Source of the DNA: Haliotis cracherodii
Taxonomy: Eukaryota
Direction of reading: 5' to 3'
DNA: 64,000 nucleotides
NCBI RefSeq assembly: GCF_022045235.1
Contig: NW_027266286.1
Span: 74,710,001-74,774,000 of the forward strand
Part shown: positions 1-47,693 of the stretch, piece by piece
Numbering within the stretch: position 1 is the first letter of the stretch
How the letters are laid out: every line of letters begins with the position of its first letter
The notes under the pieces: generated by a model
Told to the model about the DNA's origin: nothing
Seen by the model: the letters and a program-made list of their open reading frames with translations, nothing else
Databases searched by the model: none
Program-made: the position numbers and the translations under genes

Positions 1-486
1 CAAGGATGGAGACTGGACTTTTAGAGTCAGTTAACTCCCTTGCCATGGCAATTTGGGAAAAAATAGTTGTTTTATTCAAAATTTGGATTTTTAAACAGTT
101 CTTTTGTTCTTAAATTCAGACCAGACCAGGCATGCAAAACATACAGACATGTTCCTGACTTGATAATTGCTTTCTCTCTTCCTGTAGATGAAATTTAGGT
201 AGCCTAACCACATAAGTAATCACTGGATCAATTGTAATCAATCATTGTGATCAACTGTCAAAATACTCATCCAGGTCCTTACATTCCTACTTCGGAAGGA
301 TCATTATTGTAACTGGAATATAATTTGATTGTCTTTAATCCCCAACACTCCATGCCTGGCATAATATTATACAGATGACTTCTAACTGAAAAACATCAAT
401 GCAATTGGAGTTTGGGTATCTGTACTTTGGTAATAAGTAAACAGACCGGGTCAACAAAATACTTTCATCCCCAAAAGTGGAGTTAC

Positions 487-3280: not shown

Positions 3281-3927
3281 ATGGATACTGATGTGGCAAC
3301 TGAAGTTCCGGACTCCCTCAAGCGACTGATCCGGCTGATAGTGCGGGGATTTTATACAGTTGAAACAGCCATTGTTATAGACATGCTGGTGAGGAATCCC
3401 TGCATTAAGGAGGATGATATGTTGGAGTTGCTCAAGTTTGAGAGGAAACAACTTCGAGCAATTGTCAACTCCTTGAAAGTAGACAAAATACTGAAAGTGA
3501 GGATGAGGGTTGAAACTGATAGAGAAGGAAAAACCACAAGACACAATTATTATTTCATCAACTACAATGTGTTTGTGAATGTGGTCAAATATAAACTAGA
3601 CCACATGAGAAGAAAGATTGAACTTGAGGAACGCGATAACACAAGTCGTGCCTCGTTTAAATGTCCGAACTGTTTAAAGTCATTTACTGACTTGGAGGTT
3701 GGGCAGCTTGTAGACCCAATGACAGGCTCCTTACAGTGCACCTACTGCCACACAGAGGTGGAGGAGGATGAGAGCTCCATGCCGAAGAAGGATGCTCGCA
3801 CCACCATGGCCAAATTTAATGAACAGATTCAGGTTATTTATGACTTACTACGGGATTGTGAGGATATCAAACTTGCACCTGAAATCTTAGAACCTGAACC
3901 CATTGACATCACAAAGTTATTACCAAG
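3281..3927 (+). CDS. GTF2E1: General transcription factor IIE subunit 1 (TFIIE-alpha), coding exon 1
   Basis: [25 protein letters not shown]... winged helix plus zinc ribbon FKCPNC..CTYC. Ends at AG|GTAAG. Confidence 0.97.
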
Positions 3928-4022
3928 GTAAGTTATGTGTCAATAATCCCTTTTTGCATGTGTTGTTTTACTGTCATCATGGTCATATTCATAATGATAA
4001 TCATGATATCGAGGTTGAAATC

Positions 4023-10189: not shown

Positions 10190-13100
10190 TGTATCAGTTT
10201 ATTCATATATAACTGTAAGGCCACAGGCCCATAGTACAGAATACGTGACAATGTGGAAGCGGTTAGGAATGTTACAAGGATTCATTTCTTAATAACATGG
10301 CATGATATATAAAGAGAGAGAGATTTTGTATAGCCGTTTTGCTCACATGTGAAATTAAAGAGATAAACTTGTATTTATTTGGATGTACATAGTATTTCTG
10401 TTCAATATATTTTTTCCTTAAATTGTCATATTTACAACATACAAGTAGAAAATGAAATTCATCTTCGACAACATTTAAAGAACATTGTTTACATAATCTT
10501 AAACATTTGGGTATTTTGTTGTGCCTGCCAACTTCAACCATTAACCTGTGTGAGCTGCATCTAAATTGTGTTGATGATATTCTGCATTTTCTTATATTTA
10601 CATCAGTTAAATATTTTTCTGCGCATATTTGCATTTTAAAATATCTATAATATTCACATTTGCTAGAAACATCTACAGTAGATCTCCATGTTTGAAAGTA
10701 CATGTCAAAAAGCGTCTGCCTTATTTTCGATATGAACATGGCATGATTCTCTAAGAAACATTGGTTTTCCCAGATGTAACCATACCCACATTTATACAGT
10801 AGACATTTAACATTGTATGCCCAATTTTGATCTCCATTCTTTTCATACAATAGCATCATATTATAACATTTTTTTGGCAATCTACTTACTGGCATTTTTA
10901 GTAATTTTAACCAGTATCTTATGATTTTTAAGTTGTGATATATATACAAGGGCATGCGACCACATTCACCATAAACCATTACGTTAGACTTACTATGTTT
11001 AACACCAAGAAATCTTTTGCATACGTATAAATGTACGGATTCAATTTCTTTAGCCTCTGCAAAACCCCATATTTCTGAACCATAGGAAAGAATAGGAGCT
11101 ATTTTTGTGTCAAAGATTTTGAAAAAAGATTTATAAGCACACTCGCTAAAATGTTCAAACGTTTGTAAAATGCCCAATAGCATCTTTTTAGCTTGGATTG
11201 CTGCATTACATATATGTCGGTTCCATGATAATTTACTTGAAAATATTACACCAAGATATTTATATGAGGTTTCAGTTTGGAGTAATTGTCCCCGAAAGTA
11301 CCACTTTTCGTTTTTTGACAGCGTATTTCCTTTGCTAAATACAACAATTTTTGTCTTATCTAGATTAGCATTAAGTTTCCACGTATCACAGTACAATTCT
11401 AGCTGATTTATCAAAGTTTGTAAACCTTTCACAGTACTCGAGAACATGATTATATCATCTGCAAATAGTAACATAAATATTTTTATAAGTTCAGGATGTA
11501 ATTGTATACCATCATCATAATTTCTTTTGATTTGGGCTGCAAGCTCATTAATAAAAAAACAGAACAAAAAAGGGCTTAATACACATCCTTGGCGTACACC
11601 AGTATGACATATAAAAGAATCTGAATACATGCCGTTTTGTTTAACACATGATTTAACTTCCTTATAAATACCACATAACAATTTACCCATTTTATTACTG
11701 ACACCATGTGAATTAAATAGATACCATAACTTATCTCTACAGACTGAATCGAATGCTTTCGAAAAATCTACAAATATAGCATACAATTTTCCACGTTTAC
11801 GTTGAATATACCTATCTATAAGAGCCTGGAGAATAAACATATTATCAGTGGTTGAGTAACCTTGTCGAAAACCTGCTTGCTCTTCCTCAATCTTATCAAG
11901 TGCTTCCGACCACAATACCAAGCGTTTATTAATAATGCTAAGAAATATCTTACTGAATATACTGGTAAGTGTAATCCCCCTATAGTTTTCAACATCAGTC
12001 ACTGAGCCTTTTTTGTGAATTGGAACGATGGTTCCAAGTGTCCAACCTTTTGGAAAGTAAGAGGTATCCATTATTGTATTGAATAATATTTCCAAATACG
12101 ACAGGGTATTATCAAGAGAGTATTTAAAGAATTCTGTTATAAGTTTATCAAATCCCGGGCTTTTCAAGTTTTTCAGATTTTGAATAACAGATTTAATTTC
12201 TTCTTTTGAGATTGGGGAATCTAATATTTCCGTTGCAAAATTGGTTTCATCATTATCAAAAGAGTTCAACTGGAAGTTATTTGTGGAATCATCACCGCTG
12301 AAAAGATTTTTGAAGTAATTAAACCACTCATGCATTTCGATGTTACTTTTAGTTTCTTTCTTTTTGCTGATGTTTTTCAAGGTCGTCCAAAACTGTTTTG
12401 ATGAGCTGATACTTTCTTCTAGTTTTTCTCTGCTTCTATCCATGAAATTTTGTTTCTTTTTTCTGCAAGTAGCTTTATACTTATTTTTCGAATCAGTGTA
12501 CTTAGCAAGTGAGTCTTTATCCTTTAATTTTCTGAAATGGTTTAAAAGTGTGCATCTTTCCTTTTTTAACAACTCACATTCCCAGTCAAACCACTGTTTA
12601 CTTTCTCTGTTAGGGGTTACTTCCCTTTTCATTACATTCCCTGCATATGTAATAGCTTCTGTAAATAACGATACACTTTCATCAATATTTGTAAAAACAG
12701 AATCAATAGCTTCTCTTAGGAGGCATGCAAAGGTATCTGATAACAGTCGTTCTTGGAAAATATCTGCTTTGCTGTTATCCCACTTAAACATTGAATGACT
12801 ATGGTAGGCGTTTTCAAATGATGTTTTTCCACCTGAATGAAGCGCTCGTAATGACATTGTGATAGGCAGGTGCTGTGATTCGTGGCGTGACTCAATATCA
12901 AAATTTTGGCACAAGTCAAATATATCTATGGTGCTTATAATGTAATCGATAACACTTGCTCCAGCATTGCCAACAAATGTAAAATCACCTTTCTCGGAAT
13001 CACTTCCACAGCGGCCATTCATAATGTGTACATTTAAAACAGCACATAAATTGATAAAACATTTTCCAAAGTTATTAAGAACAGTATCGTTTGAATATCT

Positions 13101-19631: not shown

Positions 19632-19995
19632 AATGCTACATCATAGAACACACTGATGACAAGAAACGTTACAGTGCTACATCATATAACACACCGATGA
19701 CAAGAAACGTTACAGTACTACATCATATAACACACCTATGACAAGAAACGTTACAGTGCTACATCATAGAACACACTGATGACAAGGAACGTTACAGTGC
19801 TACATCATAGAACACACTGATGACAAGAAACGTTACAGTGCTACATCATAGAACACACTGATGACAAGGAACGTTACAGTGCTACATCATAGAACACACT
19901 GATGACAAGAAACGTTTCAGTGCTACATCATAGAACACACTGATGACAAGAAACGTTACAGTGCTACATCATAGAACACACTGATGACAAGAAAC
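19632..19995. repeat. 41-bp tandem repeat (~9 copies) overlapping the PKS stop codon and 3' UTR
   Basis: Unit GTGCTACATCATAGAACACACTGATGACAAGAAACGTTACA. Confidence 0.95.
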
Positions 19996-22900
19996 ACTTA
20001 TTGGAACCCCTCTCTTCCAAGGTCATGTACCTTTGTTGTCTAAGACGCCCTACAGTAGATCCGGGGTTGTTCAAAGCATCAGTCACAAGACCCAGGAATG
20101 CCTCCACAAGGACACCTGCTCTGGAGGTTGTGAACAGGTCCCTCCTCAGGTGAAACTTGATCTCCATGAGCCTCGTCTCCTTCCTCTGCCAGATGTACAT
20201 GAATGTTTCAGTGGAAGAATCAAAGATAACCGGCATGTCTACTGTCAGCTGGTTGGATGCACTGGTGATGATATCAGTCTCATATATGAAGTAGTTCGTA
20301 CCAAGATTTTTGACCTCGGGAACAAGCTTCTTGATTTCTTCCGATGGATATATTGCATACTTTGTGAAGTGTTGTATAGCCTTGCTGTTGCTCTGTAGGA
20401 ACTCCTGCACAGTGGTAGTTTCCTCTGGCACTTGACAGATTAGAGGAATGAAGTTCGTGCATCTCCCCAACGATCTGGTCAGAGCAGGAACCAGGCCACG
20501 AAGGTCAACCGAGGTTGTGATGGTTGATGTTGTTTTGCTGCTGACAAAGGCAAGAAAGAGCTGGTAGATACTGGCAAGATAGTCAAAGGGTGTGAGACCC
20601 ATATCTCTCGCATACTTCAATATTTTAGTGTACAGGACATTGTTGATTGTTCTTGTGATGAAGATGTGGTCAATTTGCACATTGTGTTTTGTGGGACCTT
20701 TCGAAAGGCTGTTGTATGATATGTACATTGTCTTTGTTTTCCAAAACTGGCTTACTCTCTTGAAGTTTGGAGCAAGAATTTTCTGTATTTCCTTTGCTAT
20801 ATCCTTGTCTGTGTCAGTTACAACATCTACCAGGGGCTTACCCTGTTGTACTGCATTGGCCATGTTTTCAAGTTCTTTTACCAAGATTGTAATTGCTTTT
20901 AAATCAAATGCAAGTCTGTGGAAAACCATTCTGAGCTGTAAAGATCTTCCAAGGAATATGAATCGTAATGGACTCTGGTGTTGAAGATGCATTGGCTCTT
21001 CTGTATGCTTCTTGACCTCAGACATGTCATCTCCAGATAAAATACGGAAGTCGAACGCATTCTCCAAAGTCAACGTGTTTGTGGAGACATTTTCATGGCT
21101 GAAGATGTAAGTTGTTCTAGTGATTGGATGACGTGACACACACTCTTTCGCCACAGCAATCAATGTCGATACGTTTACCACATCCGGTACTGAAATGGTG
21201 CTGACAATTACAAAACCCATGTTGTGTTCACAGTCTGCCCTAAATCCACAGACTGACCTCGCGATTGACATGCTTATTGCCTGCTTACTGATTACAGTCT
21301 CCATGTCACTTGCCTGTGCCTGTTCCTTCTCTGTACCTGACAGGATGTCCAGTATTCTTTTGGCAATGTTGCATGTTGATTGAAGCTGTATTTCGTGAGT
21401 GGACAGCTTTACTCCAATGTCTGACAAGATTCCACCTGTAATTTCCATGGCATACATCGAGTCCACACCTTGATCCTTCATATTGGCGTCCATCTGAAAA
21501 CTGTTTACATCCAACAAAGCCTTATCACACACAAGATGTTTTACATATTCCCGGAGCATCTGCAGCCCTTCTTCCGCTGAGCAGGTACGTAGTTTGTCAA
21601 CATCGCAAGATCGTTTGCCGTCTTCTGATGTTGCCTGTTCATTTAGGATCTTCATGGCAGGTTCCAAATATGTCTTTAATCGCATCATCAAGGTTGTTTC
21701 TTTATCCCTTTGTAATTGTTCTGCCATTTTCTGTCTGTCTATTCTGCACACCAAGGCTTGGGGCTCGTTCAGCATCAGCATGTGTGTAAGACACTGACTG
21801 ACATCCTTCTTATTAATGACCATGTACCCTTGACTCTCCAACTTCTTCAATACAGATCCCTTTTTCTCCAGCATCCCAAGATCGAGAGGTCCCCAATTGA
21901 TACTCTGGCCACTCATTCCTCGCTGTCTTCTGTACACTGCCAATCCATCCAGGAATCCATTACCAGCTCCGTAGTTTGATTGACCAGCATTCCCCAGAAC
22001 AGCTGCCCCAGAAGAATGCAGGACAAAGAAGTCAAGAGGAAGATCTGCGGTCAGGATATGAAGATTCCAAGCACCAGTTACCTTTGGAGACATGGCTGTG
22101 ACAAGTTTTTCCTCTGTCATTTCAGCAAGGGAAGCATCCTGTAAAACAGCTGCCCCGTAGAATATGCCCTTGAGAGGTTTCAGATGTTTCCTTATCTTTA
22201 GTATAGCTGTTTCTATATCCTTGTAGACTGTGACATCAGTTTGAATAGATGTTATGTGACAGTTATGTTGCTGAGATAGATGGTCCATATCCACTTGTGT
22301 TTCAGGATTAGGCTTACGTCTACTCAGAATGATCACGCTTCCAGCGCCTCCTGCTGCAAGGGATGTCACACATTCCCATCCTAGTCCTGTCAGTCCCCCA
22401 ACAACCACATAAGAACCTGTGTCCTGGAACAGGTGGGTACTTGGTGTCATCATGGTTTCCATGTCAAAGTTGCTGTCTGAAGACAAGGACAACTCGGTGC
22501 TATTAAGAACTTCTGAGATGTTTAGTGGGATGACTGTTCCCTGTAGTTTTGAAACCCGGAAGTCATTGAAGCTGTCGCATATTTTGAAGACAGTTTCACT
22601 GTGGGATTTGATCCATTTAATCATTCTGGGTACTGTCTCAAGCATTACCCTCTGAGAAAATATTTCAAATGGTCGTATGACCTGAAGTTGAACGTCTTGC
22701 ACTGCCCCAAACAGGTTCTGGAGGACAGACTTTTTTGTGATTGGTTCAAAGCAAATGATTTTCCGTACATTTGTAAACATTTTCCAAAGTCTTTTGGCTT
22801 CTACTTCTGTCAGTAAAACTGTAGGAATCAATGTCACAAAATCGTCTCTTTGTAGTACAGTTTCATCTGGTTTGACTAATGACACATGTTTTGCCCCTTG

Positions 22901-25900
22901 TGAAAGAAGCAAGTGTGACATTGCATTTGCAAAGGTTTTACTGCTGCTTGAATACAAAATGACTACATTGTTCTTTGCAGTGTGAATGGACATCGACCAC
23001 ATAAGATACAGTGTGGTTAGCTGACTTGGGACATAACCAGGCATGTGTCTTGCATCTATGGTGCAGCTCTTTGGAACTTTGATATTCTTGCAAACATGTG
23101 TAGGAAAGAGGGTAATTTTGTCAGGATGGTTACTTCTTGATTTGGCTGATATTTTTCCAATTGCTTCGAGACACAGAATTGGGTGTATATCTGTTGTGGA
23201 TGCTCTAGGGCGTCCACTGTGAACTCCATGCAACAAAGGGCTATGCACCACCACAGAAGTCACAACAATATCAGTCATATCTTTTGTGGAAGTTGTTGTC
23301 TTTTCTTTTGGGTAGAAAAATGGATTAACTATTGATGTTTTTGATTTTGAGCAGAGCAAACCCTCAGTGTGTTCATCCATTGTAGCTGCCCGAAACACAG
23401 GCTGTGGGTTTGGGTGTGGCAGAATTGTGTTCATGTACATTTTGTCATTGTGGAATTTCATCTCAGGATACCTCATGAAGTCCTCGGATGTGCTTTGTGA
23501 TAATATCCCTGGGAGGCTTGCTAAGAACTTCTCGTCATTGTCGACTAGAACATCCACAAGCTGAATGTGGAGAGCTCTATACTCCCTCAAGACACACCTC
23601 ATGAAACCTTTGACAGCTTCACTAAGACAGCCACTGGCAGCATTATCTCCTGCGTCTCGTATCTCTGAAATGATCACCAGTGGAACAGACACTCCTCTGC
23701 TGGCAGCGTAAAGGGCAATCAGTCTCAAGGACATGATCCTCCTTGTGAGTTCTTTTTGCAGCGATTCTCCCGTGTCTGTTATGAGGTCAGTTACTGCAAA
23801 GACAAAGCAGATTTGCTTGATGTTATGTATGACAGAGTCAAGCGCACGTTTTGTGCCTTCAACTCCCATGTGATCCAATTCATGTATGACACAGGCTAGA
23901 TCCACATTGGTTAGATCTACGTTGGTGAAGATGACTAATCCAGTGTCAACATTGTTCTGAGAAACGTGAAAGGAACCCAAGGGAACCAAGCTTGTTTTGA
24001 ATGTTGCATTGTGAATATCAAAAGTGTCTGATCCTATAAATTTTGTTGTGAATCTTTCAACATGTGCTATGACAGATCCATCAGGTGAAAGAAGTGTCAA
24101 GGTAAATGAGGTGTGTGATCTGGTGGAGTCTGTCATTCTTGCATAAACAAACATTTCGGTCTTCACTGAATGTCTGACAGTTACATTCTTAAGCTCGACT
24201 GGAAGAAATTCTTTTTCTTCCATGTTGAACGCAGCTGCTGACTGCAGCATTCCATCGAGTATTGCCGGATGAATTACAGTGTTGGTCATCTCCTCTTTCA
24301 GCTTTTGTCCAACTGTTAACTTTGTTAGACTTTCAGATTCCCCCCTCAGTGCATAGTTCATAGTTGCAAAGTTAGGACCGTATGTAAATCCTGAATACTT
24401 CAGAGCTTGATACACCTCGTCGCCAGTGACTGTTTCGGTACATCGCTCCTGTATGGCCTCCATGTCCATCCGCTCCTCATCAGGTGCACTGTCGCACACC
24501 AGTATTCTCCCCTTTGCAATGGCAACACCTGTACTTTGGATGGTGAAAGTTTTCGTACAGTCGTTCGCAATTTGATCCTCAACCTCAACATCTAGTTGAA
24601 CAGACATTTCTTTTTTTAAAGTAACTGGATTCAGAAAGCTGACTGATATGATCAGATTTCTAACATTGGCAATATTCATTGACCTTGCGAATCCAAACCC
24701 TGCCTCGACGTAGGTTGCACCTGGGACAACAACAATGTCCTTGATCTTGTGTTCATAGACAGTTCCAAACGTAGATGGGCGGATGTTCAGCATGCATTTG
24801 TCTGTGGAAGATGACAGTTTTACAAAGAGATGATTGCCAGAGTTTCCACTGGATCCAAACACTTCTTCTTCCGTAATTACAGGCAGGATCATTAGGTACT
24901 TGTGCGAGAAGGCATAACACGGCATTGGTGTTGGAGGTTCTGTGTGCGTGAATATTTCCTGCCAGTTTATGTTCACCTTCAGCTGGTACAGCTCAGAGAG
25001 GGTCACCAGCATCGTGTTCTCACTAAACTTAACTGTCAAGGAAGGAAGGCATAGACATGATGGCGAACCTTTTGTAAAAATATCATCCATGTGAGCTTTC
25101 AATACTGGCTGAGGGCCAATCTCTATAAATACATTGAGATGATTGTCAGAGGTAGATCTTTCTATTGCTGATGCGAACTGAACAGGGTTTCGAACATTCT
25201 TACCCCAGTATTCTGATGAATTAACATCCTTCTCTGTGAGGTGAGCATCAGCTGTTGATATCATAGGTATTCTTGCCGGTAACGACTTCAGATTGGCTAG
25301 TACACTGTCCAACTGTATCTTGCTCTGATCCATGTGGTGGCTGTGGTACGCAGCACCAACATGAAGATCAGTCAGTGTAAGATTGCTGTGAGAAAGTTGA
25401 AGACGTGACCTCAAATCATCCACGGCAGCAGAGTCACCACTAACTGCACACGACACAGGACTGTAAGAAAGTGCAATGTTCACGCCTGCAATGTCTTCAC
25501 AAATTTCCTGTACATTGTCCGTTTTAAGGTTTCTGACAAGAAGCATCTTACCACCTGTGGCTTCAGCTAGGATTCGAGACCTGTGGTAGATGACCCTCAC
25601 AGCTTCACTCAGGGACAGGATTCCAGCCATGTGTGCTGCAGCCACCTCTCCCACTGACTGGCCCACAACAACTGCTGGCACCACTCCCCAAGATTCCCAC
25701 TGTTTGGCCAGCGCAACCTGACAAGCAAATATGGCGATCGGACCAAACAGAGGGTCTTCTACGTCATAACCGCTTCTCAGCCTTTTGGTCAATGACCAGG
25801 ACACGAACCTTTTCAAGGACACATCAATCATGTTGATTGTTTTGGAGAAAGTTTTGTTCATTTTCATGAAGCCATCACACATTCCTGACCAAGCAGTGCC

Positions 25901-41070: not shown

Positions 41071-42069
41071 CTATTTTTTCCATATAACATCATATGGCCA
41101 AGTTTTGAATAGCTTCGGGTCGAGTTTTTCGCCCCCAATACGTGGCTCGTAGGCAGAATAATTTAAACTTAATAATAAATCTACCAGTCTGTTTCCATTG
41201 ACATCTGATTTCATAAGTACCCATTCCATAAGAATTGCTGGAACATCTATCTCCTTGAAAAACCTCTTGGCACCTGAGATAACATAGTATTCGTACTCTT
41301 GTATGTCCATTTTTATAACTGCCTTCTTGAAAGGCAGATAGGGCAAGGTGTCGTCAAGAGTTATTGTAAACGAGTCTGCTGATTCCTCGCACGGTGATGC
41401 AGGGGACGAACCCGACGACGCCACAACGTTTGTACCGCCAACGTTGTCCACTTCCCGTTTGAAATTGACAAGGCTATTGTTTGCCCCGAGAGGGTTGAAT
41501 ATGATGGTCATCCTGTCTGTGTAGCCACCCTTCTGAATAGACTTACACAGTCGCTGGACATTCTCTATGAGCGGATCTACAGATACCACCTTCCTCCCGA
41601 ACTTGGCCACAGACAGGGAGTAGGCGCCAACATGAGATCCTAGATCCATGAAGCCAAGCTCAGGGTCCTTGTTCAATTCCGAGCCAATAAGATCGATATT
41701 TTCTGGTTCCCATGTCCCAACCTCCTTTAAAGTTTTGGACACAAACCTGTCGACCACGACGTCGTGTATATGTATCGGTATCGCGCCCGACGACGTCCTC
41801 AGAGGAACGCAGTCCAGGTGAACGGTCCACGTACAGAACTCGTGGAGTTTCTGCATCTGACTACCGTTGAATCTGTACACCTGCGTCTTGCCAGAACTTG
41901 AGCGGGGCTGGGCCCAGTCAATTTTCTCCCACGTCTTTCTAGGTCTGGACGTAGTATCAGCTCCCATCATACTCGTGAAAGGCGGCAGCACAACGTGTTC
42001 TAGGATCAGCAGGATGCATGCGCCAGTGAGCATCATAAGGACAAAAGGCTTCCGGCGTTGCATCGTCAT
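41071..42069 (-). CDS. FkbM-family (Methyltransf_21) SAM-dependent methyltransferase with an N-terminal type II membrane anchor, ~332 aa, single coding exon
   Basis: Acceptor TTTACAG at 42111, then MTMQRRKP and the hydrophobic FVLMMLTGACILLILEHVVL. Motifs: G.WE, FMDLGSHVGAYSL (SAM motif I), VSVDP, ITLDD, IKMDIQEYE, ILMEW. Confidence 0.85.
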   Translation of the reverse strand: MTMQRRKPFVLMMLTGACILLILEHVVLPPFTSMMGADTTSRPRKTWEKIDWAQPRSSSGKTQVYRFNGSQMQKLHEFCTWTVHLDCVPLRTSSGAIPIHIHDVVVDRFVSKTLKEVGTWEPENIDLIGSELNKDPELGFMDLGSHVGAYSLSVAKFGRKVVSVDPLIENVQRLCKSIQKGGYTDRMTIIFNPLGANNSLVNFKREVDNVGGTNVVASSGSSPASPCEESADSFTITLDDTLPYLPFKKAVIKMDIQEYEYYVISGAKRFFKEIDVPAILMEWVLMKSDVNGNRLVDLLLSLNYSAYEPRIGGEKLDPKLFKTWPYDVIWKK

Positions 42070-42377
42070 CGCTGGTTGTGGCTGACTTGATCTGTGGTTA
42101 CAGCTGATGCCTGTAAAGTAGACAACACCAGAATATGACATAGACACAGTGCAACGTACGGTTTTCAGTGAAGTAAGACAAATTAAAGACAATCATAATA
42201 ATAAATTTCAATAAAAAATAAAATAAATAATATTGGACCATAAAGATGTTTATCTGCGGTCGTTCAAAGGTATTACGTTACACAATTTGAAGGACAGGCT
42301 TATATCATGGTGAGTGAGTGAGTAAGTGAGTGAGTGTGGGTCAATATCGACGGTTCGTAGGATCTCCTATCTTGTCA

Positions 42378-45300
42378 ATCAGTTTATTCAGTACATAAAA
42401 GGCCACAGGCCTATAGTACAATGTGTATTTACATGTAGGTGACGTGGTTGTTAACTAACAATTCTGTTTCTATGTGACATCGCGTGATAAACATATGTTG
42501 ATAGGTTACATAACATAGTATCATTAGATGAAGTTAAAAGATCTACAAACTTATGGACATTCGGGTGTACAGAGTAGAAAGATGGTAAATATTCATCACG
42601 TAAATGTTTGTAACCTTGACATACCAGGAGAAAGTGAAACTCAATTGAATTTGTGTTACACAATGTGCATATTCTGTCTCTTCTATCAGTGTGATTATAT
42701 CTACAAGTCTCTATATACAGGTTGTGAGAGGAACATCTAAATCGTGCTAGTACAATTCTAATTTTTTTAAACTCAAGTTTACAGAGGTACGCCTCAATTT
42801 CAATATTACTTTTCATGATTCTATATTTGATTTGGACATTAAATTCTAGCCATTTCTGCAAATACATATCTTTTAGTCTCTGGGTGAAGGACATTAAAAA
42901 GAGCGGTTATGATTCTAAACACTGATTATACCACGCATAATTAAAACCCGTAATAAATAATAATTCTTTTACGTTTGTTACCCAATTACGTTTTCCAGTA
43001 CTGTCGTAGAGTTTTAACATATCATAGCACTTCCTAGGGTTTCTATCATTAGTCATGTTCATCAAGCGAAGCCAGTATTTAATAACTTTTAAGTAGGATT
43101 GAATATACAGTGGATATCGTCCCGTTTCTCCATATACTATTATGCTGAACGTACTATTTTTAACTCCTAAATATTTCTTGCACACAAACAAATGTACTTT
43201 TTCAATTTGATCATGAATTTTTATACCCCAGATTTCAGTACCATAGTGTAGTATTGGAATTATCTTTGTATCAAAATTTTAAAATATGGTCTAAATGAGA
43301 TGTCTCTCAGAAATGGAGACTGTCTAAATATACCAGTCCAAACCTTTTTAGCTTGTATAGCAGCTTGATTGACTTGAAAATGCCATGAAAGTTGATTTGT
43401 GAAATAAACACCAAGATATTTATAGGAAGATGTGGTTTCCAAAATTTCTCCATGGTGAAACTATTTTTCAGTTGATGCTAGTTTTCCCCCACTTTTAAAG
43501 ACTATAACTTTTGTTTTTTAATCTCTATTAACAACTAAGTTTCATTCTTTACATTTTTATTTTATTTTTCATGTTCATTAATTAGCCTTTGCAAACCAAT
43601 CACTGTCGTGGAGCAATGTCTGAAATAATTCCGTAAGATCTGGATGTAACTAAATACCATGGGAGAAATTGTCTTGTATTTAAGTAGCTAATTCATTAAT
43701 GAAAAAAGAAAATAGAAACGGACTCATTATACAGCCTTGTCTAACACCTAAACCAATAGCAAAACTTTCTGACAGTTCGTTATTATTTCTCACGCAGGCT
43801 ATAACATTGGTGTATATACTTCTCAAAAGATTACTCATTTTCAAGCTAATTCCGTGCGATTCTAACACTGTCAATAGTTTTGTTCTATCTACCCTGTCAA
43901 ACGCCTTTGAAAAATCAACGAAAAGTGCATAAACCTTTCTACCTCTTTTACTAAGACATTTCTCTATTAGACTCTGTAGTGTAAAAATATTATCGATGGT
44001 AGAATATCCCTGTCGAAAACCAGCTTGTGCTTCACTAATTTTCCCCATTATATCTGCCCAATTCTGTAATCTTTTATTTATAATGTATATGAACAATTTA
44101 CTAAAGACGCTTAAAAGTGTTATACCTCGGTAGTTATTGGTACTGTTAATAACACCATGTTTATGGATGGGGACAATTATGCCAACCGTCCATGATTCGG
44201 GGAAATTCCCACTCTGTAGAATATGATTAAAAACAAGTGATAAATATGGTATTATGATATCTAAACAGTGTTTGAAGAATTCCGGTAGCATTTTGTCAAT
44301 TCCTGGCGATTTATTGTTTTTAAATTATCTATGCTATTCATTATTTCCTGAAAAGAAATTGGAGAATCTAAAAAGTCAGTTACGACATCATCGGTTTCAC
44401 GAATTCGGTCAAACTCTGTAGTATGTACATGGTCCTTATCCATATCATTACTATTTGATTCGAAAAGAGTTTTAAAGTGAGAAACCCATTCTCCTGAACT
44501 GATATCATAGCCCTGGGAATATTTTCCTCTAAGTTTTCTTAATATTGACCAGAACTGGGTTGAGTCATCTATACTGTTTGCTAAGAGTATCCTTTGTTTT
44601 TGGAAGTAGTTATTTTGTTTTCTATCTACAAATGGCATTGTACTTATTTCTTGCTGCATTATAGAGTTGTAATGAATCCCTGTCTTTAAGTTGTCTAAAC
44701 TTATTTAGGTACTTACACCTCTGTCGTTTCAATTCTTCACATTCTCTATCAAACCACTTATTAACCCTTTCCGAGTAATTAGAACTTTTAACTTTTCTTT
44801 TCATTTCACAGGCAGCTTTCGAGATTGCCTCAACCATACAATCGATACTCTTATTAATATTGACGGACACTTCTTCCTGTGACATGTTTAACACAGTCTG
44901 TGCCTCATCTGTAAGTAAATTTTCTCTGAAAGTTTCACAGCGCTGAACATCCCAAACAAACTTATAATGAGAAACTCTATCACAACGAGAACTATTGTTG
45001 CTACATGGGTGAGGATGAAGCGTCCGTAAAGTCACAGAAACTGGAAGATGTGGAGAGTCAGCACGTGATGAAATCTCGAAATCAGCTACATAGTCAAATA
45101 TAAAAGATGATGCAATTACATAGTCCACAAGACTGGCACCGAGTGATCCAATACATGTGTAATCTCCGCGTCCTGAGGCTGATCCACATCTCCCATTCAT
45201 GATATGTACGTTGAAAATTGAACATAAATCTAGTAAAGATCTACCCAAGGCATTAATGTTCTTATCCACAGAGTAACGTGGTTCTTTAAAATAATCTAGT

Positions 45301-46200
45301 ATAAAGTCGTAACGCGACTGGCAATGTTTTTCTGTTTGTTCAACTCTTACATCTTCAATAAAGTCAGCCTTTGTTCCTGTGCAGGCATTAAAGTCTCCGC
45401 CACAGAGAATATACATGTCATTTTCAGATGTTAAAATATTATACAGATTCTCGTGACACATATCGATTCCATTTTTACAATCTGCTGACATCTTAGTGTA
45501 CCATGTGGAACCTTCTGCATGGATGTAAGCACATGCATATAAGAAATTGTGATAAAACCAAACATAAACTTGTCAAATACAAAGAAAATAGCATTTTCTG
45601 TTATCTTAATAGAGATGAGATTCTTATAAAATATCCTTTTAATCAGAATTGTAATTCCACCAGAGAGTCTTCCATGGTCTGACCGCCTCCGTGGTCTAGT
45701 GGTAGAGCGTCCGCCCGGAGAGCGGAAGGTCCGGGGTTCGATCCCCGGTCACGTTAAAAGATGGTACTTGTTGTTACCCTGTCTGGCGCTCGGCATCAAG
45801 GGGCTAAAACAAGGACTGGTCAGCTCGGAGTCAGTATACTGTGTTTGAGTGGGGTATTTATGTTAAACTGCGGCATGGTATCTCAGTGAGCTATCACTAT
45901 AAATCGGCATCAGTCCGGACTAGTACAAGCAGCCACACACACACAAGTACTACACGTCGGTATATAAGTGCAATAATCTTGGACGCGACGTTAAACCCCA
46001 TTTCACCTCACCTCTTCCATGGTCTGCTAATTTGTCTGCACTTTTATACACATACTCACATTCTGTAAATATATCTGTGAGGCCAATTATATCAAACTGA
46101 TGTAGGTATGAAATAAAGTCATTGTCCATTAACCTATATACAAGTCCTGAAACGTTCCAAAAAATGAAACTAACAGTGGCTGTGTCATCACAGTCCTGGT
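42378..46200 (-). mobile_element. Degenerate LINE (EN-RT-CCHC) related to the 10190-13711 element
   Basis: FWNVSG, GGDFNA, HIMNGRCGS, QAGFRQGYST, VDFSKAFD, GVRQG, FRCSSH. Multiple frameshifts, and the same 3' UTR motif. Confidence 0.9.
45681..46012 (+). mobile_element. tRNA-derived SINE (family B) inserted in the LINE endonuclease region
   Basis: A box TGGTCTAGTGG, B box GGTTCGATCCC, (CACCT)n tail, and TSD TCTTCCATGGTCT at 45668 and 46013. Confidence 0.9.
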
Positions 46201-46951: not shown

Positions 46952-47145
46952 NNNNNNNNNNNNNNNNNNNNNNNNNNNNNNNNNNNNNNNNNNNNNNNNN
47001 NNNNNNNNNNNNNNNNNNNNNNNNNNNNNNNNNNNNNNNNNNNNNNNNNNNNNNNNNNNNNNNNNNNNNNNNNNNNNNNNNNNNNNNNNNNNNNNNNNNN
47101 NNNNNNNNNNNNNNNNNNNNNNNNNNNNNNNNNNNNNNNNNNNNN
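46952..47145. other. Assembly gap (N run)
   Basis: N characters. Confidence 1.
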
Positions 47146-47528: not shown

Positions 47529-47693
47529 NNNNNNNNNNNNNNNNNNNNNNNNNNNNNNNNNNNNNNNNNNNNNNNNNNNNNNNNNNNNNNNNNNNNNNNN
47601 NNNNNNNNNNNNNNNNNNNNNNNNNNNNNNNNNNNNNNNNNNNNNNNNNNNNNNNNNNNNNNNNNNNNNNNNNNNNNNNNNNNNNNNNNNNNN
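47529..47693. other. Assembly gap (N run); 47146-47528 is duplicated at 47694-48079
   Basis: N characters, with near-identical sequence following both gaps. Confidence 1.

What the first reader, a model, noticed from the sequence alone, without database searches (positions are those of the whole stretch)
22450..24050. Dead ER and missing MT predict an unmethylated polyene product, a candidate shell or tissue pigment synthase
Seen: between DH and KR there is a short psiKR-like segment and an ER-sized region with no Gly-rich NADPH motif (VVILYSSSSKTFANA where HxAxGGVG is expected). No GxGxG SAM motif is evident. The KR has LQD (B-type-like), consistent with feeding an active DH. Established: KR+DH without ER yields conjugated polyenes (parrot psittacofulvins via MuPKS), and Raman studies report non-carotenoid polyenes in many mollusc shells. 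Related animal PKSs also act in biomineralisation (fish otolith PKS, urchin pks2). Inference: this could make a polyene pigment or a biomineralisation lipid, unless a trans-ER (LovC-like) acts.
Basis: inference. Interest (0 to 1): 0.75.

Follow-up and report, generated by a model that had tools for sequence, protein, structure and literature searches.

The report
Dead enoylreductase domain in abalone PKS
This stretch of an abalone polyketide synthase gene encodes a structural ketoreductase half plus a reductase-shaped domain that has lost its cofactor-binding loop, so the enzyme probably leaves double bonds unreduced, but nothing yet ties it to shell colour.

Summary
Window 22450-24050 (minus strand) lies in one 2168-codon exon of a Haliotis type I PKS with the order KS-AT-DH-[540 aa]-KR-ACP-C. 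No Pfam, PDB-sequence or profile search recognises the 540 aa.

AlphaFold models are confident (pLDDT 82-83). They show a psiKR subdomain (ORF 817-1023) and a complete MDR/enoylreductase fold (ORF 1029-1330). The ER part aligns to JamJ ER at Z 15.6, and all top PDB hits are ER or quinone reductases. In 45 of 45 family members the NADPH pyrophosphate loop has at most one glycine. There is no room for a methyltransferase.

The domain is conserved across molluscs and under purifying selection. It is retained in four runs' contigs, although two RefSeq models splice it out.

A dead ER with intact-looking KR and DH makes an unsaturated or polyene chain plausible, following EcPKS1. "Unmethylated" is only a lean, based on AT motifs. 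The pigment role has no evidence, and tissue expression could not be tested. I file it as a new member of a known kind (ER0 reducing PKS; the mollusc PKS clade is already published).

The parts
23402..24022 (-). psiKR: the structural (N-terminal) subdomain of the ketoreductase, ORF residues 817-1023
   Evidence: AF2 model residues 18-224 align to KR structural subdomains: 7s6b_D Z 14.5, rmsd 4.9, 194 aligned; 3mjt_A Z 13.0. No Pfam hit.
22481..23386 (-). ER0: a degenerate enoylreductase (MDR) fold domain, ORF residues 1029-1330
   Evidence: Whole-domain structural matches: JamJ ER 5dov_B Z 15.6 with 262 of 338 aligned, CurK ER 5dp1 Z 14.9, human FAS ER 4w9n Z 13.0. Domain-only model has pLDDT 82.9 and pTM 0.85. 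All top Foldseek hits are MDR reductases, TM 0.41-0.53. No sequence-level hit.
22922..22966 (-). Degenerate cofactor loop VVILYSSSSKTFANA (residues 1169-1183): strand bA, loop, start of helix aA
   Evidence: Position, secondary structure. In an alignment of 45 family members, 41 have no Gly in the 8 loop columns, 4 have one, and 0 have two or more.
23156..23167 (-). Conserved E-x-x-G (E1102, G1105) in the GroES-like half. It may be a vestige of the MDR GxExxGxV motif (motif recalled).
   Evidence: E1102 is invariant in 45 of 45 and G1105 is present in 42 of 45. A non-significant hhalign run places it on the FDTAG of an own-genome quinone-reductase-like protein.
24035..24790 (-). DH domain (about residues 561-812), with H574 in HxxxDxxxxP, YGPNF at 697-701 and D739xxxQ743
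   Evidence: Pfam PS-DH 4.9e-24. Motif positions; the motif definitions are recalled.
21884..22417 (-). Catalytic KR domain (residues 1352-1529), with GGLTGLG at 1358, LQD at 1443-1445 and Y1500
   Evidence: Pfam KR 4.2e-56. Motif positions.
22599..23471 (-). In-frame 873-nt GT..AG piece that the H. rufescens RefSeq model P0002 treats as an intron
   Evidence: P0002 sequence, tblastn mapping, junction DNA. Contigs of 4 runs run straight through both junctions with no joints.
22477..23361 (-). A different in-frame 885-nt GT..AG piece that the H. cracherodii RefSeq model P0061 treats as an intron
   Evidence: tblastn of P0061 on the window, junction DNA. Contigs of 4 runs are unbroken here.
19964..26557 (-). 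Giant last exon holding KS C-end, AT, DH, psiKR, ER0, KR, ACP and C. The upstream KS exons lie at about 30682-30170, 29811-29605, 28549-28319 and 26941-26741.
   Evidence: ORF, Pfam, tblastn of the RefSeq models.

Best explanation
The stretch encodes two non-catalytic pieces of the reducing region of an abalone iterative type I polyketide synthase, KS-AT-DH-psiKR-ER0-KR-ACP-C. The first is the structural half of the ketoreductase. The second is a domain that keeps the two-lobed enoylreductase (MDR) fold but has lost the glycine-rich loop that holds NADPH.

Shown here: the fold, the loss of the loop in the whole family, the conservation across molluscs, the purifying selection, the absence of any methyltransferase, and the retention of the stretch in assembled contigs.

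Inferred: the domain is a scaffold that keeps the MAS-like geometry of the reducing region and does no reduction. KR and DH look intact, so each fully processed cycle would end at an alpha,beta-double bond. The chain would therefore be unsaturated or polyene-like, unless a separate reductase acts in trans. It is probably built from malonyl units and is handed off by the C-terminal condensation-like domain. Its biological role is not known from this evidence.
For: Architecture. Fold: the 561-aa model has pLDDT 81.9. Foldseek top hits are the MAS DH-ER-KR regions 9d2y and 5bp4 at E 1e-16 to 5.5e-17, then the KR-ER didomain 3slk, LovB 7cpx, FAS and EcPKS2. VIA gives whole ER domains at Z 13-15.6 over model residues 230-531. 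The domain-only model has pTM 0.85, with 376 PDB matches at E<=0.001 whose listed top rows are all MDR reductases. Atlas features point to the ADH_N, ADH_zinc_N and DUF2855 families at 0.84-0.86, a lead only.

Dead cofactor loop: 0 of 45 members have more than one Gly. The 17 own-genome PF00107 matches include none at this locus or at the paralog loci.

Coding and constrained: 6 own-genome paralogs cover the full region in open frames. There are 38 relatives in the representative library. The 7 of 10 clusters looked up that carry a name are all molluscs, both gastropods and bivalves. Identity to the H. asinina orthologue is 68.9% with no indels. Paralog-pair dN/dS in ER0 is 0.42, 0.26, 0.65 and 0.30, similar to DH at 0.23-0.48.

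Retained in contigs: records of 7575 and 5220 nt span 21500-25000 without a joint, and 4 of 4 runs show no joints. Relatives of 2297-2689 aa sit on contigs of 7.1-8.2 kb, which fits mRNA.

Precedent for ER0 giving a polyene: PMC7280274.
Against: There is no statistical sequence similarity to any ER: Pfam 0 hits, PDB phmmer and a 7-sequence profile find nothing relevant, and hhalign probability is below 1% against two real MDRs of this genome. ER identity therefore rests on predicted structure.

Foldseek TM is only 0.41-0.53 with rmsd 6-12 A for the domain-only model. Two RefSeq models leave the domain out. The runs laid are only guessed to be RNA, and contigs cannot exclude a minor spliced form.

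ER0 is the least conserved domain against H. asinina. Against the close relative in the runs it shows 11 non-synonymous and 6 synonymous changes, from a table that listed only 40 of 96 differences.

Product, starter and extender units and release chemistry are untested. The C domain has HRxxxD where HHxxxDG is expected (motif recalled).
Confidence: 0.78

Rival explanations
1. The ER-sized piece is an intron, or an exon-internal intron removed in most transcripts, as the two RefSeq models have it. The enzyme would then be KS-AT-DH-psiKR-KR-ACP-C with no ER-like domain.
For: P0002 (H. rufescens) and P0061 (H. cracherodii) each omit about 291-295 residues. Both use canonical GT..AG sites that keep the frame.
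Against: The two models use different junctions for the same job, which looks like model building rather than one real intron. The frame stays open for 2168 codons. The piece is kept in the H. asinina model, in 6 paralogs and in 37 further relatives. dN/dS is 0.26-0.65. It folds confidently. Contigs of 4 runs from 4 studies pass through all four junctions without a joint.
Confidence: 0.07
2. The ER-fold domain is dead, but a separate MDR enoyl reductase acts in trans (LovC-like). The product would then be partly or fully saturated, not a polyene.
For: LovB with ER0 works this way (mentioned in PMC7280274). The genome has stand-alone MDR genes, including a quinone-reductase-like ORF (L010) and an MECR-like ORF (L012).
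Against: No MDR match lies in the window or near any PKS paralog. The nearest hits on the same chromosome are more than 33 Mb away. Animal pathways are rarely clustered, so this is weak evidence either way.
Confidence: 0.15
3. One reading: the enzyme makes an unmethylated polyene that colours shell or tissue, or a lipid used in biomineralisation.
For: ER0 with active-looking KR and DH. The host is a mollusc. In a pearl mussel, pks15 and pks-like 1 transcripts rise in coloured nacre donors (PMC12652611, passages).
Against: There are no expression, genetic or chemical data for this gene. No paper was found on abalone PKS and colour. An abalone pigmentation genomics paper does not mention PKS or polyenes (PMC13544226, term search). 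The family has at least 7 copies in this genome and occurs across molluscs of many colours. The C domain predicts an amide or ester, not a free polyenal or polyenoic acid.
Confidence: 0.08
4. The domain is not ER-derived. It would be an unrelated alpha/beta insert that AlphaFold draws as an MDR because of its place in a PKS.
For: All sequence-based tests fail. TM is only about 0.5.
Against: Both lobes (GroES-like and Rossmann-like) are present in the right order. Whole target chains are covered (-2..335 of JamJ ER) at Z 15.6. pTM is 0.85. The insertion point between psiKR and KR is the canonical ER site in MAS and FAS, which are the best hits. The language-model neighbours are MDR families.
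Confidence: 0.06
5. The ER domain still binds NADPH in a non-canonical way and is active.
For: Several residues are nearly invariant across the family: E1102, G1105, P1123, P1133, Y1146 and G1149. This shows constraint beyond bare folding.
Against: No member has a glycine-rich loop. There is no PF00107 signal. Charged or bulky residues fill the loop in many members.
Confidence: 0.04

Closest known systems
Mollusc PKS clade with a C-terminal condensation domain (Lin et al., Nat Commun 2024, PMC10764717; section 8 read)
   Same: Mollusc host. Type I PKS ending in an NRPS-type C domain. Few introns, all at the N-terminus, followed by one giant exon.
   Different: The text I read does not mention an ER-like domain in this clade. 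Their tools (antiSMASH, InterPro) would probably miss it, as Pfam does here. Their Fig. 4A and Supplementary Data 11-12 were not visible to me.
Mycocerosic acid synthase (MAS) and MAS-like PKS modifying region DH-psiKR-ER-KR (PDB 5bp4, 9d2y)
   Same: Best structural match for the whole 561-residue stretch, at E 5.5e-17 to 1e-16. No psiMT between DH and psiKR. RefSeq names these genes 'mycocerosic acid synthase-like'.
   Different: The MAS ER is active and its AT takes methylmalonyl-CoA (recalled). Here the cofactor loop is gone and a C domain follows the ACP.
EcPKS1/EcPKS2, sacoglossan animal FAS-like PKSs with an inactive ER (PMC7280274; PDB 9cq9, 9ctl)
   Same: Mollusc iterative PKS whose ER lacks NADPH-binding residues and which gives polyenes. 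Structural match to their modifying regions at Z 13.1-14.3.
   Different: AFPKs keep a psiMT, have many introns, lack a C domain and belong to the FAS-like branch. Their ER is still recognisable by sequence, according to that paper's own annotation.
LovB (lovastatin nonaketide synthase, PDB 7cpx)
   Same: Both have an inactive ER and end in a condensation-type domain. The order is KS-AT-DH-...-ER0-KR-ACP-C. Foldseek E 1.6e-11.
   Different: LovB has an active C-methyltransferase and a known trans-ER partner, LovC (recalled, and mentioned). Neither an MT nor a partner is seen here.
Stand-alone and in-line PKS enoylreductases JamJ, CurK and CurF ER (PDB 5dov, 5dp1, 5dp2)
   Same: Same two-lobe MDR fold over the whole domain, Z 14.7-15.6.
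   Different: Identity is 9-12%, there is no Gly-rich loop, and there is no Pfam ADH_zinc_N signal.

Membership tests
Reducing iterative type I PKS with an inactive ER (ER0) | Domain order KS-AT-DH-...-KR-ACP on one polypeptide | tested here: met
   Pfam on the 2168-aa ORF gives KS C-end, AT, DH, KR, PP-binding and Condensation. The upstream KS exons were mapped.
Reducing iterative type I PKS with an inactive ER (ER0) | An ER-fold domain inserted between the psiKR and the catalytic KR | tested here: met
   Model residues 230-531 match whole ER domains at Z 13-15.6, and residues 18-224 match psiKR. The domain-only model confirms this. This is a predicted structure, not a solved one.
Reducing iterative type I PKS with an inactive ER (ER0) | Loss of the NADPH-binding residues | tested here: met
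   0 of 45 family members have more than one Gly in the bA-aA loop. There is no ADH_zinc_N hit. The equivalence of the loop to the cofactor loop comes from the model's secondary structure, not from a residue-level alignment to a real ER.
Reducing iterative type I PKS with an inactive ER (ER0) | No enoyl reduction by the enzyme itself | not testable with these tools
   Needs enzyme assays.
MDR-superfamily enoylreductase (Pfam ADH_N / ADH_zinc_N) | Significant match to the family profiles | tested here: not met
   0 families at E<=10. hhalign probability is below 1% against two real MDRs. It has the MDR fold but is not a sequence-level member.
C-methyltransferase domain of HR-PKS, or psiMT of FAS/AFPK | A SAM-MT fold or profile match between DH and psiKR | tested here: not met
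   No MT family. DH ends near residue 812 and psiKR starts near 817, so there is no room.
Animal FAS-like PKS (AFPK) | psiMT retained and introns spread along the whole gene (PMC10764717, section 8) | tested here: not met
   There is no psiMT, and one 6.6-kb exon holds everything after the KS. This is not an AFPK.
Mollusc PKS clade (Lin et al. 2024) | Few introns, concentrated at the N-terminus, with an optional C-terminal C domain | tested here: met
   Placement on a KS phylogeny was not tested.
B-type (DH-feeding) ketoreductase | LDD-type motif with the last Asp kept, plus the catalytic Tyr and the NADPH motif | tested here: met
   LQD at 1443-1445, Y1500 and GGLTGLG at 1358. The rule itself is recalled, and stereochemistry was not tested.
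Polyene pigment synthase (parrot MuPKS type) | Expression in pigment-forming tissue and a coloured polyene product | not testable with these tools
   Run metadata are coded. No literature link was found.

The most novel reading that the evidence does not exclude
The sequence-invisible ER-fold domain has been kept for the whole history of gastropods and bivalves, with a handful of invariant residues (E1102, G1105, P1123, P1133, Y1146, G1149). It may therefore not be a mere spacer. It could have a new non-redox job, such as shaping or gating the growing unsaturated chain, or docking a partner. The abalone enzyme would then make a conjugated polyene amide or ester that contributes to the non-carotenoid polyene signals reported from mollusc shells.
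Probability: 0.1. Interest if true: 0.75.

Novelty: new member of a known kind. Interest (0 to 1): 0.38.

Why it matters
Inactive ER domains are the usual reason why reducing PKSs give polyenes, and mollusc PKSs with C domains are already described. The basic kind is therefore known. Three things are added here.

First, the roughly 540-residue "gap" that domain finders leave between DH and KR in this mollusc clade is a psiKR plus a complete but sequence-invisible ER fold. That changes product prediction for the whole clade.

Second, two RefSeq gene models cut this domain out with different in-frame introns. That looks like an annotation error worth correcting.

Third, the enzyme is a concrete target for expression. 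Abalone are farmed, and the origin of mollusc polyenes is an open question. A product assay would be informative even though no pigment link exists yet.

Tried and rejected
Sequence routes to the ER identity all failed.
- Pfam on residues 800-1360 gave nothing.
- PDB phmmer gave only a chance Fab hit at E 0.15.
- A 7-sequence profile against PDB gave only chance hits.
- hhalign of that profile, and of a 42-sequence profile, against two real MDRs of the same genome gave probabilities of 0.1-0.5%.
- PDB phmmer with the C domain gave nothing at E<=0.01.

The idea that the neighbouring FkbM-type methyltransferase (41071-42192) replaces the missing MT was considered and set aside. The family has at least 28 copies, and none lies beside a PKS paralog.

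A clustered trans-ER was looked for and not found.

Rows dropped from alignments:
- P0002 was left out of alignments A1 and A3 and of the local alignment, because it lacks the region.
- A3 also leaves out P0003 and P0004, which match own-genome paralogs (P0003 contains the L002 segment exactly; P0004 judged from the alignment blocks), and the fragments P0024 and P0034.

Limits of two calculations:
- The synonymous/non-synonymous tally uses only the 40 differences that one search listed out of 96. It covers 21620-23600.
- The paralog L007 (679-aa open frame) and the KR+ windows of L004 and L006 include decayed sequence, so their dN/dS values are rough.

Papers:
- PMC10764717: section 8 and term passages.
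- PMC7280274, PMC11739604, PMC11414698, PMC13544226, PMC12652611 and PMC11989308: term passages only.
- Li et al. 2022 (SpPks1) was not held.
- Supplements were not opened. Supplementary Data 11-12 of PMC10764717 may already show or omit an ER in this clade.

The claim that no paper links an abalone PKS to colour rests on the searches only.

Full report
WHAT IS THERE

The finding sits inside one open frame of 2168 codons on the minus strand, 19964..26470. This is the last and giant exon of a gene whose KS exons lie upstream, at about 30682-30170, 29811-29605, 28549-28319 and 26941-26741.

Pfam reads the exon as follows:
- KS C-end, residues 1-39
- KS-AT linker
- AT, 184-478
- DH, 570-812
- no hit between 812 and 1352
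- KR, 1352-1529
- ACP, 1642-1698
- an NRPS-type condensation domain, 1757-2142

The best database relatives are RefSeq models named "mycolipanoate synthase-like" (Haliotis rufescens, P0002) and "mycocerosic acid synthase-like" (H. asinina, P0001). The H. cracherodii model P0061 is 100% identical to the window over 1065 residues. The window is therefore abalone DNA, from that species or something indistinguishable from it here.

CHECK OF THE OBSERVATION

The finding's coordinates are ORF residues 808-1341, exactly the interval that Pfam leaves blank. Scanned alone, residues 800-1360 match no Pfam family even at E<=10 and nothing meaningful in PDB sequences.

The quoted peptide VVILYSSSSKTFANA is at residues 1169-1183, window 22922-22966. 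LQD is at 1443-1445 in the KR. No methyltransferase family is found.

RELATIVES

The same genome holds six paralogs that cover all 561 residues at 24-32% identity inside long open frames, plus two partial copies with TGA stops. A full HMMER pass over 1.84 billion representatives finds 38 proteins at E<=0.001, of which 13 are at E<=1e-10.

Of ten clusters looked up, seven carry names and all seven are molluscs: Haliotis, Patella, Physella, Bradybaena, Mytilus (two clusters) and Argopecten. Three clusters are unnamed. Several relatives of 2297-2689 aa sit on contigs of only 7.1-8.2 kb. That fits mRNA-derived assemblies which include this region.

FOLD

An alignment of 45 sequences (the window piece, 6 paralogs and 38 database proteins; P0002 left out because it lacks the region) gave an AlphaFold model with mean pLDDT 81.9.

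Foldseek against PDB puts ER-containing modifying regions first:
- mycocerosic acid synthase 9d2y, E 5.5e-17
- MAS-like DH-ER-KR 5bp4, E 1.3e-16
- the KR-ER didomain 3slk
- LovB 7cpx
- insect and human FAS
- EcPKS2
- then free-standing ERs

The second-look aligner splits the model cleanly. Residues 18-224 (ORF 817-1023) lie on KR structural subdomains (7s6b Z 14.5, 3mjt Z 13.0). Residues about 230-531 (ORF 1029-1330) lie on entire ER domains:

| Target | Z | rmsd (A) | Aligned |
|---|---|---|---|
| JamJ ER 5dov_B | 15.6 | 4.9 | 262 of 338 |
| CurK ER 5dp1 | 14.9 | 4.5 | 261 of 332 |
| CurF ER 5dp2 | 14.7 | 4.6 | 259 of 335 |
| human FAS ER 4w9n | 13.0 | 3.8 | 234 of 310 |

A second model of the ER-like piece alone (41-row alignment) has pLDDT 82.9 and pTM 0.85. 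It gives 376 PDB matches at E<=0.001, and the listed top rows are all MDR enoyl or quinone reductases. TM is a modest 0.41-0.53 and rmsd is 6-12 A. I attribute the high rmsd to lobe orientation, but it is also a caveat.

Language-model neighbours are ADH_N, ADH_zinc_N and DUF2855 clusters at 0.84-0.86, which the tool rates as a lead only.

Against this, every sequence-based comparison with real ERs fails. This includes hhalign of a 42-sequence profile against a quinone-reductase-like ORF (L010) and an MECR-like ORF (L012) of the same genome. ER ancestry is therefore supported by predicted structure and by position in the architecture, not by sequence statistics.

THE COFACTOR SITE

In both models the peptide VVILY is strand bA, SSSSK is the loop, and TFANAMSHLLLSQ is helix aA of the Rossmann-like lobe. 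MDR reductases carry a glycine-rich loop at this place (recalled).

Across the 45 aligned members, 41 have no glycine in these eight columns, 4 have a single one, and none has two. Many have acidic or bulky residues there.

A genome-wide six-frame search with PF00107 finds 17 matches. None is at this gene or at any paralog.

A few positions are almost invariant: E1102 in 45 of 45, G1105 in 42, P1123 in 43, P1133 in 42, Y1146 in 43 and G1149 in 44. The E-x-x-G pair may be the remnant of the MDR GxExxGxV motif (recalled; only a non-significant alignment supports it).

IS IT REALLY CODING?

Two RefSeq models remove the domain. P0002 skips 22599-23471 (873 nt). P0061 skips 22477-23361 (885 nt). 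Both use GT..AG sites and both stay in frame. The H. asinina model keeps the domain.

The evidence that it is exon:
- The frame is open throughout.
- The orthologue is 68.9% identical over 302 residues with no gap. This is the lowest of all domains, but not far below psiKR at 74.4%, AT at 77.6% and DH at 78.2%. KR is 88.2%.
- Paralog-pair dN/dS in the ER-like part is 0.42, 0.26, 0.65 and 0.30. The DH part of the same pairs gives 0.48, 0.31, 0.35 and 0.23.
- Contigs of four runs from four studies cross all four annotated junctions with no joint. Two single records, of 7575 and 5220 nt, span the whole of 21500-25000.

Those runs differ from the window by about 2% and are only guessed to be RNA. 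Their assembled size of 74-107 Mb, against a 1.18-Gb genome, fits transcriptomes. Contigs cannot exclude a rare spliced isoform.

Against that close relative, the listed substitutions in the ER-like part are 11 non-synonymous and 6 synonymous, compared with 4 and 9 in the KR stretch (only 40 of 96 differences were listed). This suggests looser constraint in this orthologue, though the numbers are small.

HOW IT MOST LIKELY WORKS

Shown: an MAS-like reducing region (DH-psiKR-ER-KR, no psiMT) in which the ER keeps its shape but not its cofactor loop.

Inferred: the domain is a scaffold. The following motifs are present (the motif rules are recalled):
- KR: GGLTGLG, the catalytic Tyr1500 and LQD
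- DH: His574 in HxxxDxxxxP, YGPNF and D739xxxQ743
- ACP: its Ser1671

Fully processed cycles should therefore stop at the enoyl stage. That gives an unsaturated, possibly conjugated chain, as shown for EcPKS1, whose ER lacks NADPH-binding residues (PMC7280274, passages).

Extender choice is uncertain. The AT has GQSVGE. Its AAYH aligns with the YASH of five methylmalonyl-type bacterial ATs that also have GHSQGE. By recalled bacterial rules, Val in the first motif and an aromatic third residue in the second lean towards malonyl. However, Torres et al. state that animals have no model for AT selectivity, and EcPKS1 gets methyl branches without SAM. "Unmethylated" is therefore a lean, not a prediction.

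Release presumably goes through the C domain.

A trans-acting reductase cannot be excluded, but none is nearby.

COMPARISON WITH WHAT IS KNOWN

Lin et al. 2024 already describe a mollusc PKS clade with and without C domains, and with few, N-terminal introns (PMC10764717, section 8). This gene fits that clade.

It is not an AFPK, because it has no psiMT and no dense introns.

Functionally it resembles EcPKS1/2 and LovB (ER0). Structurally it resembles MAS.

Echinoderm PKSs warn that layout does not fix the product. They make aromatics through an inactive KR (PMC11414698). Here the KR Tyr is present.

THE PIGMENT IDEA

I found no evidence for it. Run metadata are coded, so tissue could not be read. 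No paper links abalone PKSs to colour. A recent abalone pigmentation genomics paper has no occurrence of polyketide, PKS or polyene. One abalone gonad study lists a "PpsB" PKS in a table of genes with fold-change values, and I could not tell which gene it is.

The only indirect lead is a pearl-mussel study in which pks15, pks-like 1 and a patched-domain gene rise in coloured nacre donors. It echoes an earlier scan note of a PKS-Patched pair at the paralog cluster of this genome (s1-843354, untested).

VERDICT

The dead ER and the missing MT are supported. A polyene product is plausible. An unmethylated product is a lean only. The pigment role is unsupported.

This is a new member of a known kind. 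Two small additions are useful. The clade's "blank" linker is a psiKR plus a sequence-invisible ER fold. And two RefSeq models probably mis-splice it out.

Noticed in passing
window 22477-23471 (-): Two RefSeq gene models (H. rufescens P0002, H. cracherodii P0061) remove the ER-like domain with two different in-frame GT..AG introns, of 873 and 885 nt. The H. asinina model keeps it. Contigs of four runs show no such joint. This is probably an annotation artefact, though a minor isoform is not excluded.
   Followed up: yes
window 20903-20923 (-), ORF residues 1850-1856: The condensation domain reads FHRLAFD, that is H-R where the recalled HHxxxDG motif has H-H. Its catalytic competence is open. 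PDB phmmer with this domain found nothing at E<=0.01.
   Followed up: partly
window 41071-42192 (-): A 373-aa ORF with a weak FkbM-type methyltransferase match (PF05050, 24.3 bits) and an N-terminal hydrophobic stretch lies about 10 kb upstream of the PKS on the same strand. The family has at least 28 copies in the genome, none beside a PKS paralog, so the adjacency is probably chance.
   Followed up: partly
G000 C23:14.02-14.42 Mb and 17.06 Mb; C3:4.25 Mb (L002-L009): The genome has a paralog family of the same PKS type. Five copies have open frames of 1758-2223 aa, one has only 679 aa (L007), and two are partial copies with two TGA stops each (L008, L009). Most sit in one cluster on the window's chromosome.
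   Followed up: partly
window 25646-25663 and 25334-25354 (-): The AT active-site motif is GQSVGE (Gln where bacterial ATs have His), and it is conserved in the family consensus. The specificity motif is AAYH, neither HAFH nor YASH.
   Followed up: partly
L010 (G000 C11:11.19 Mb) and L012 (G000 C23:40.21 Mb): These are intron-free ORFs for a quinone-oxidoreductase-like MDR (339 aa, with GASGGVG) and an MECR-like enoyl reductase (387 aa). They are the kind of protein that could act as a trans-ER, but nothing links them to the PKS.
   Followed up: no
window 3281-3931 (+); 10272-13022 (-); 43680-45491 (-); 6.8-10.2 kb, 13.4-17.1 kb, 31.8-32.5 kb, 49.4-50.1 kb: A TFIIE-alpha exon (Pfam 1.4e-25), LINE-like reverse-transcriptase ORFs, and several long tandem-repeat tracts that give spurious ORFs. 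N runs at 46952-47145 and 47529-47693 were left alone.
   Followed up: no
An earlier scan note reports a PKS next to a Patched-family transporter at the paralog cluster of this genome. This is an untested lead for a colour link of the family, not of this gene.
   Followed up: no
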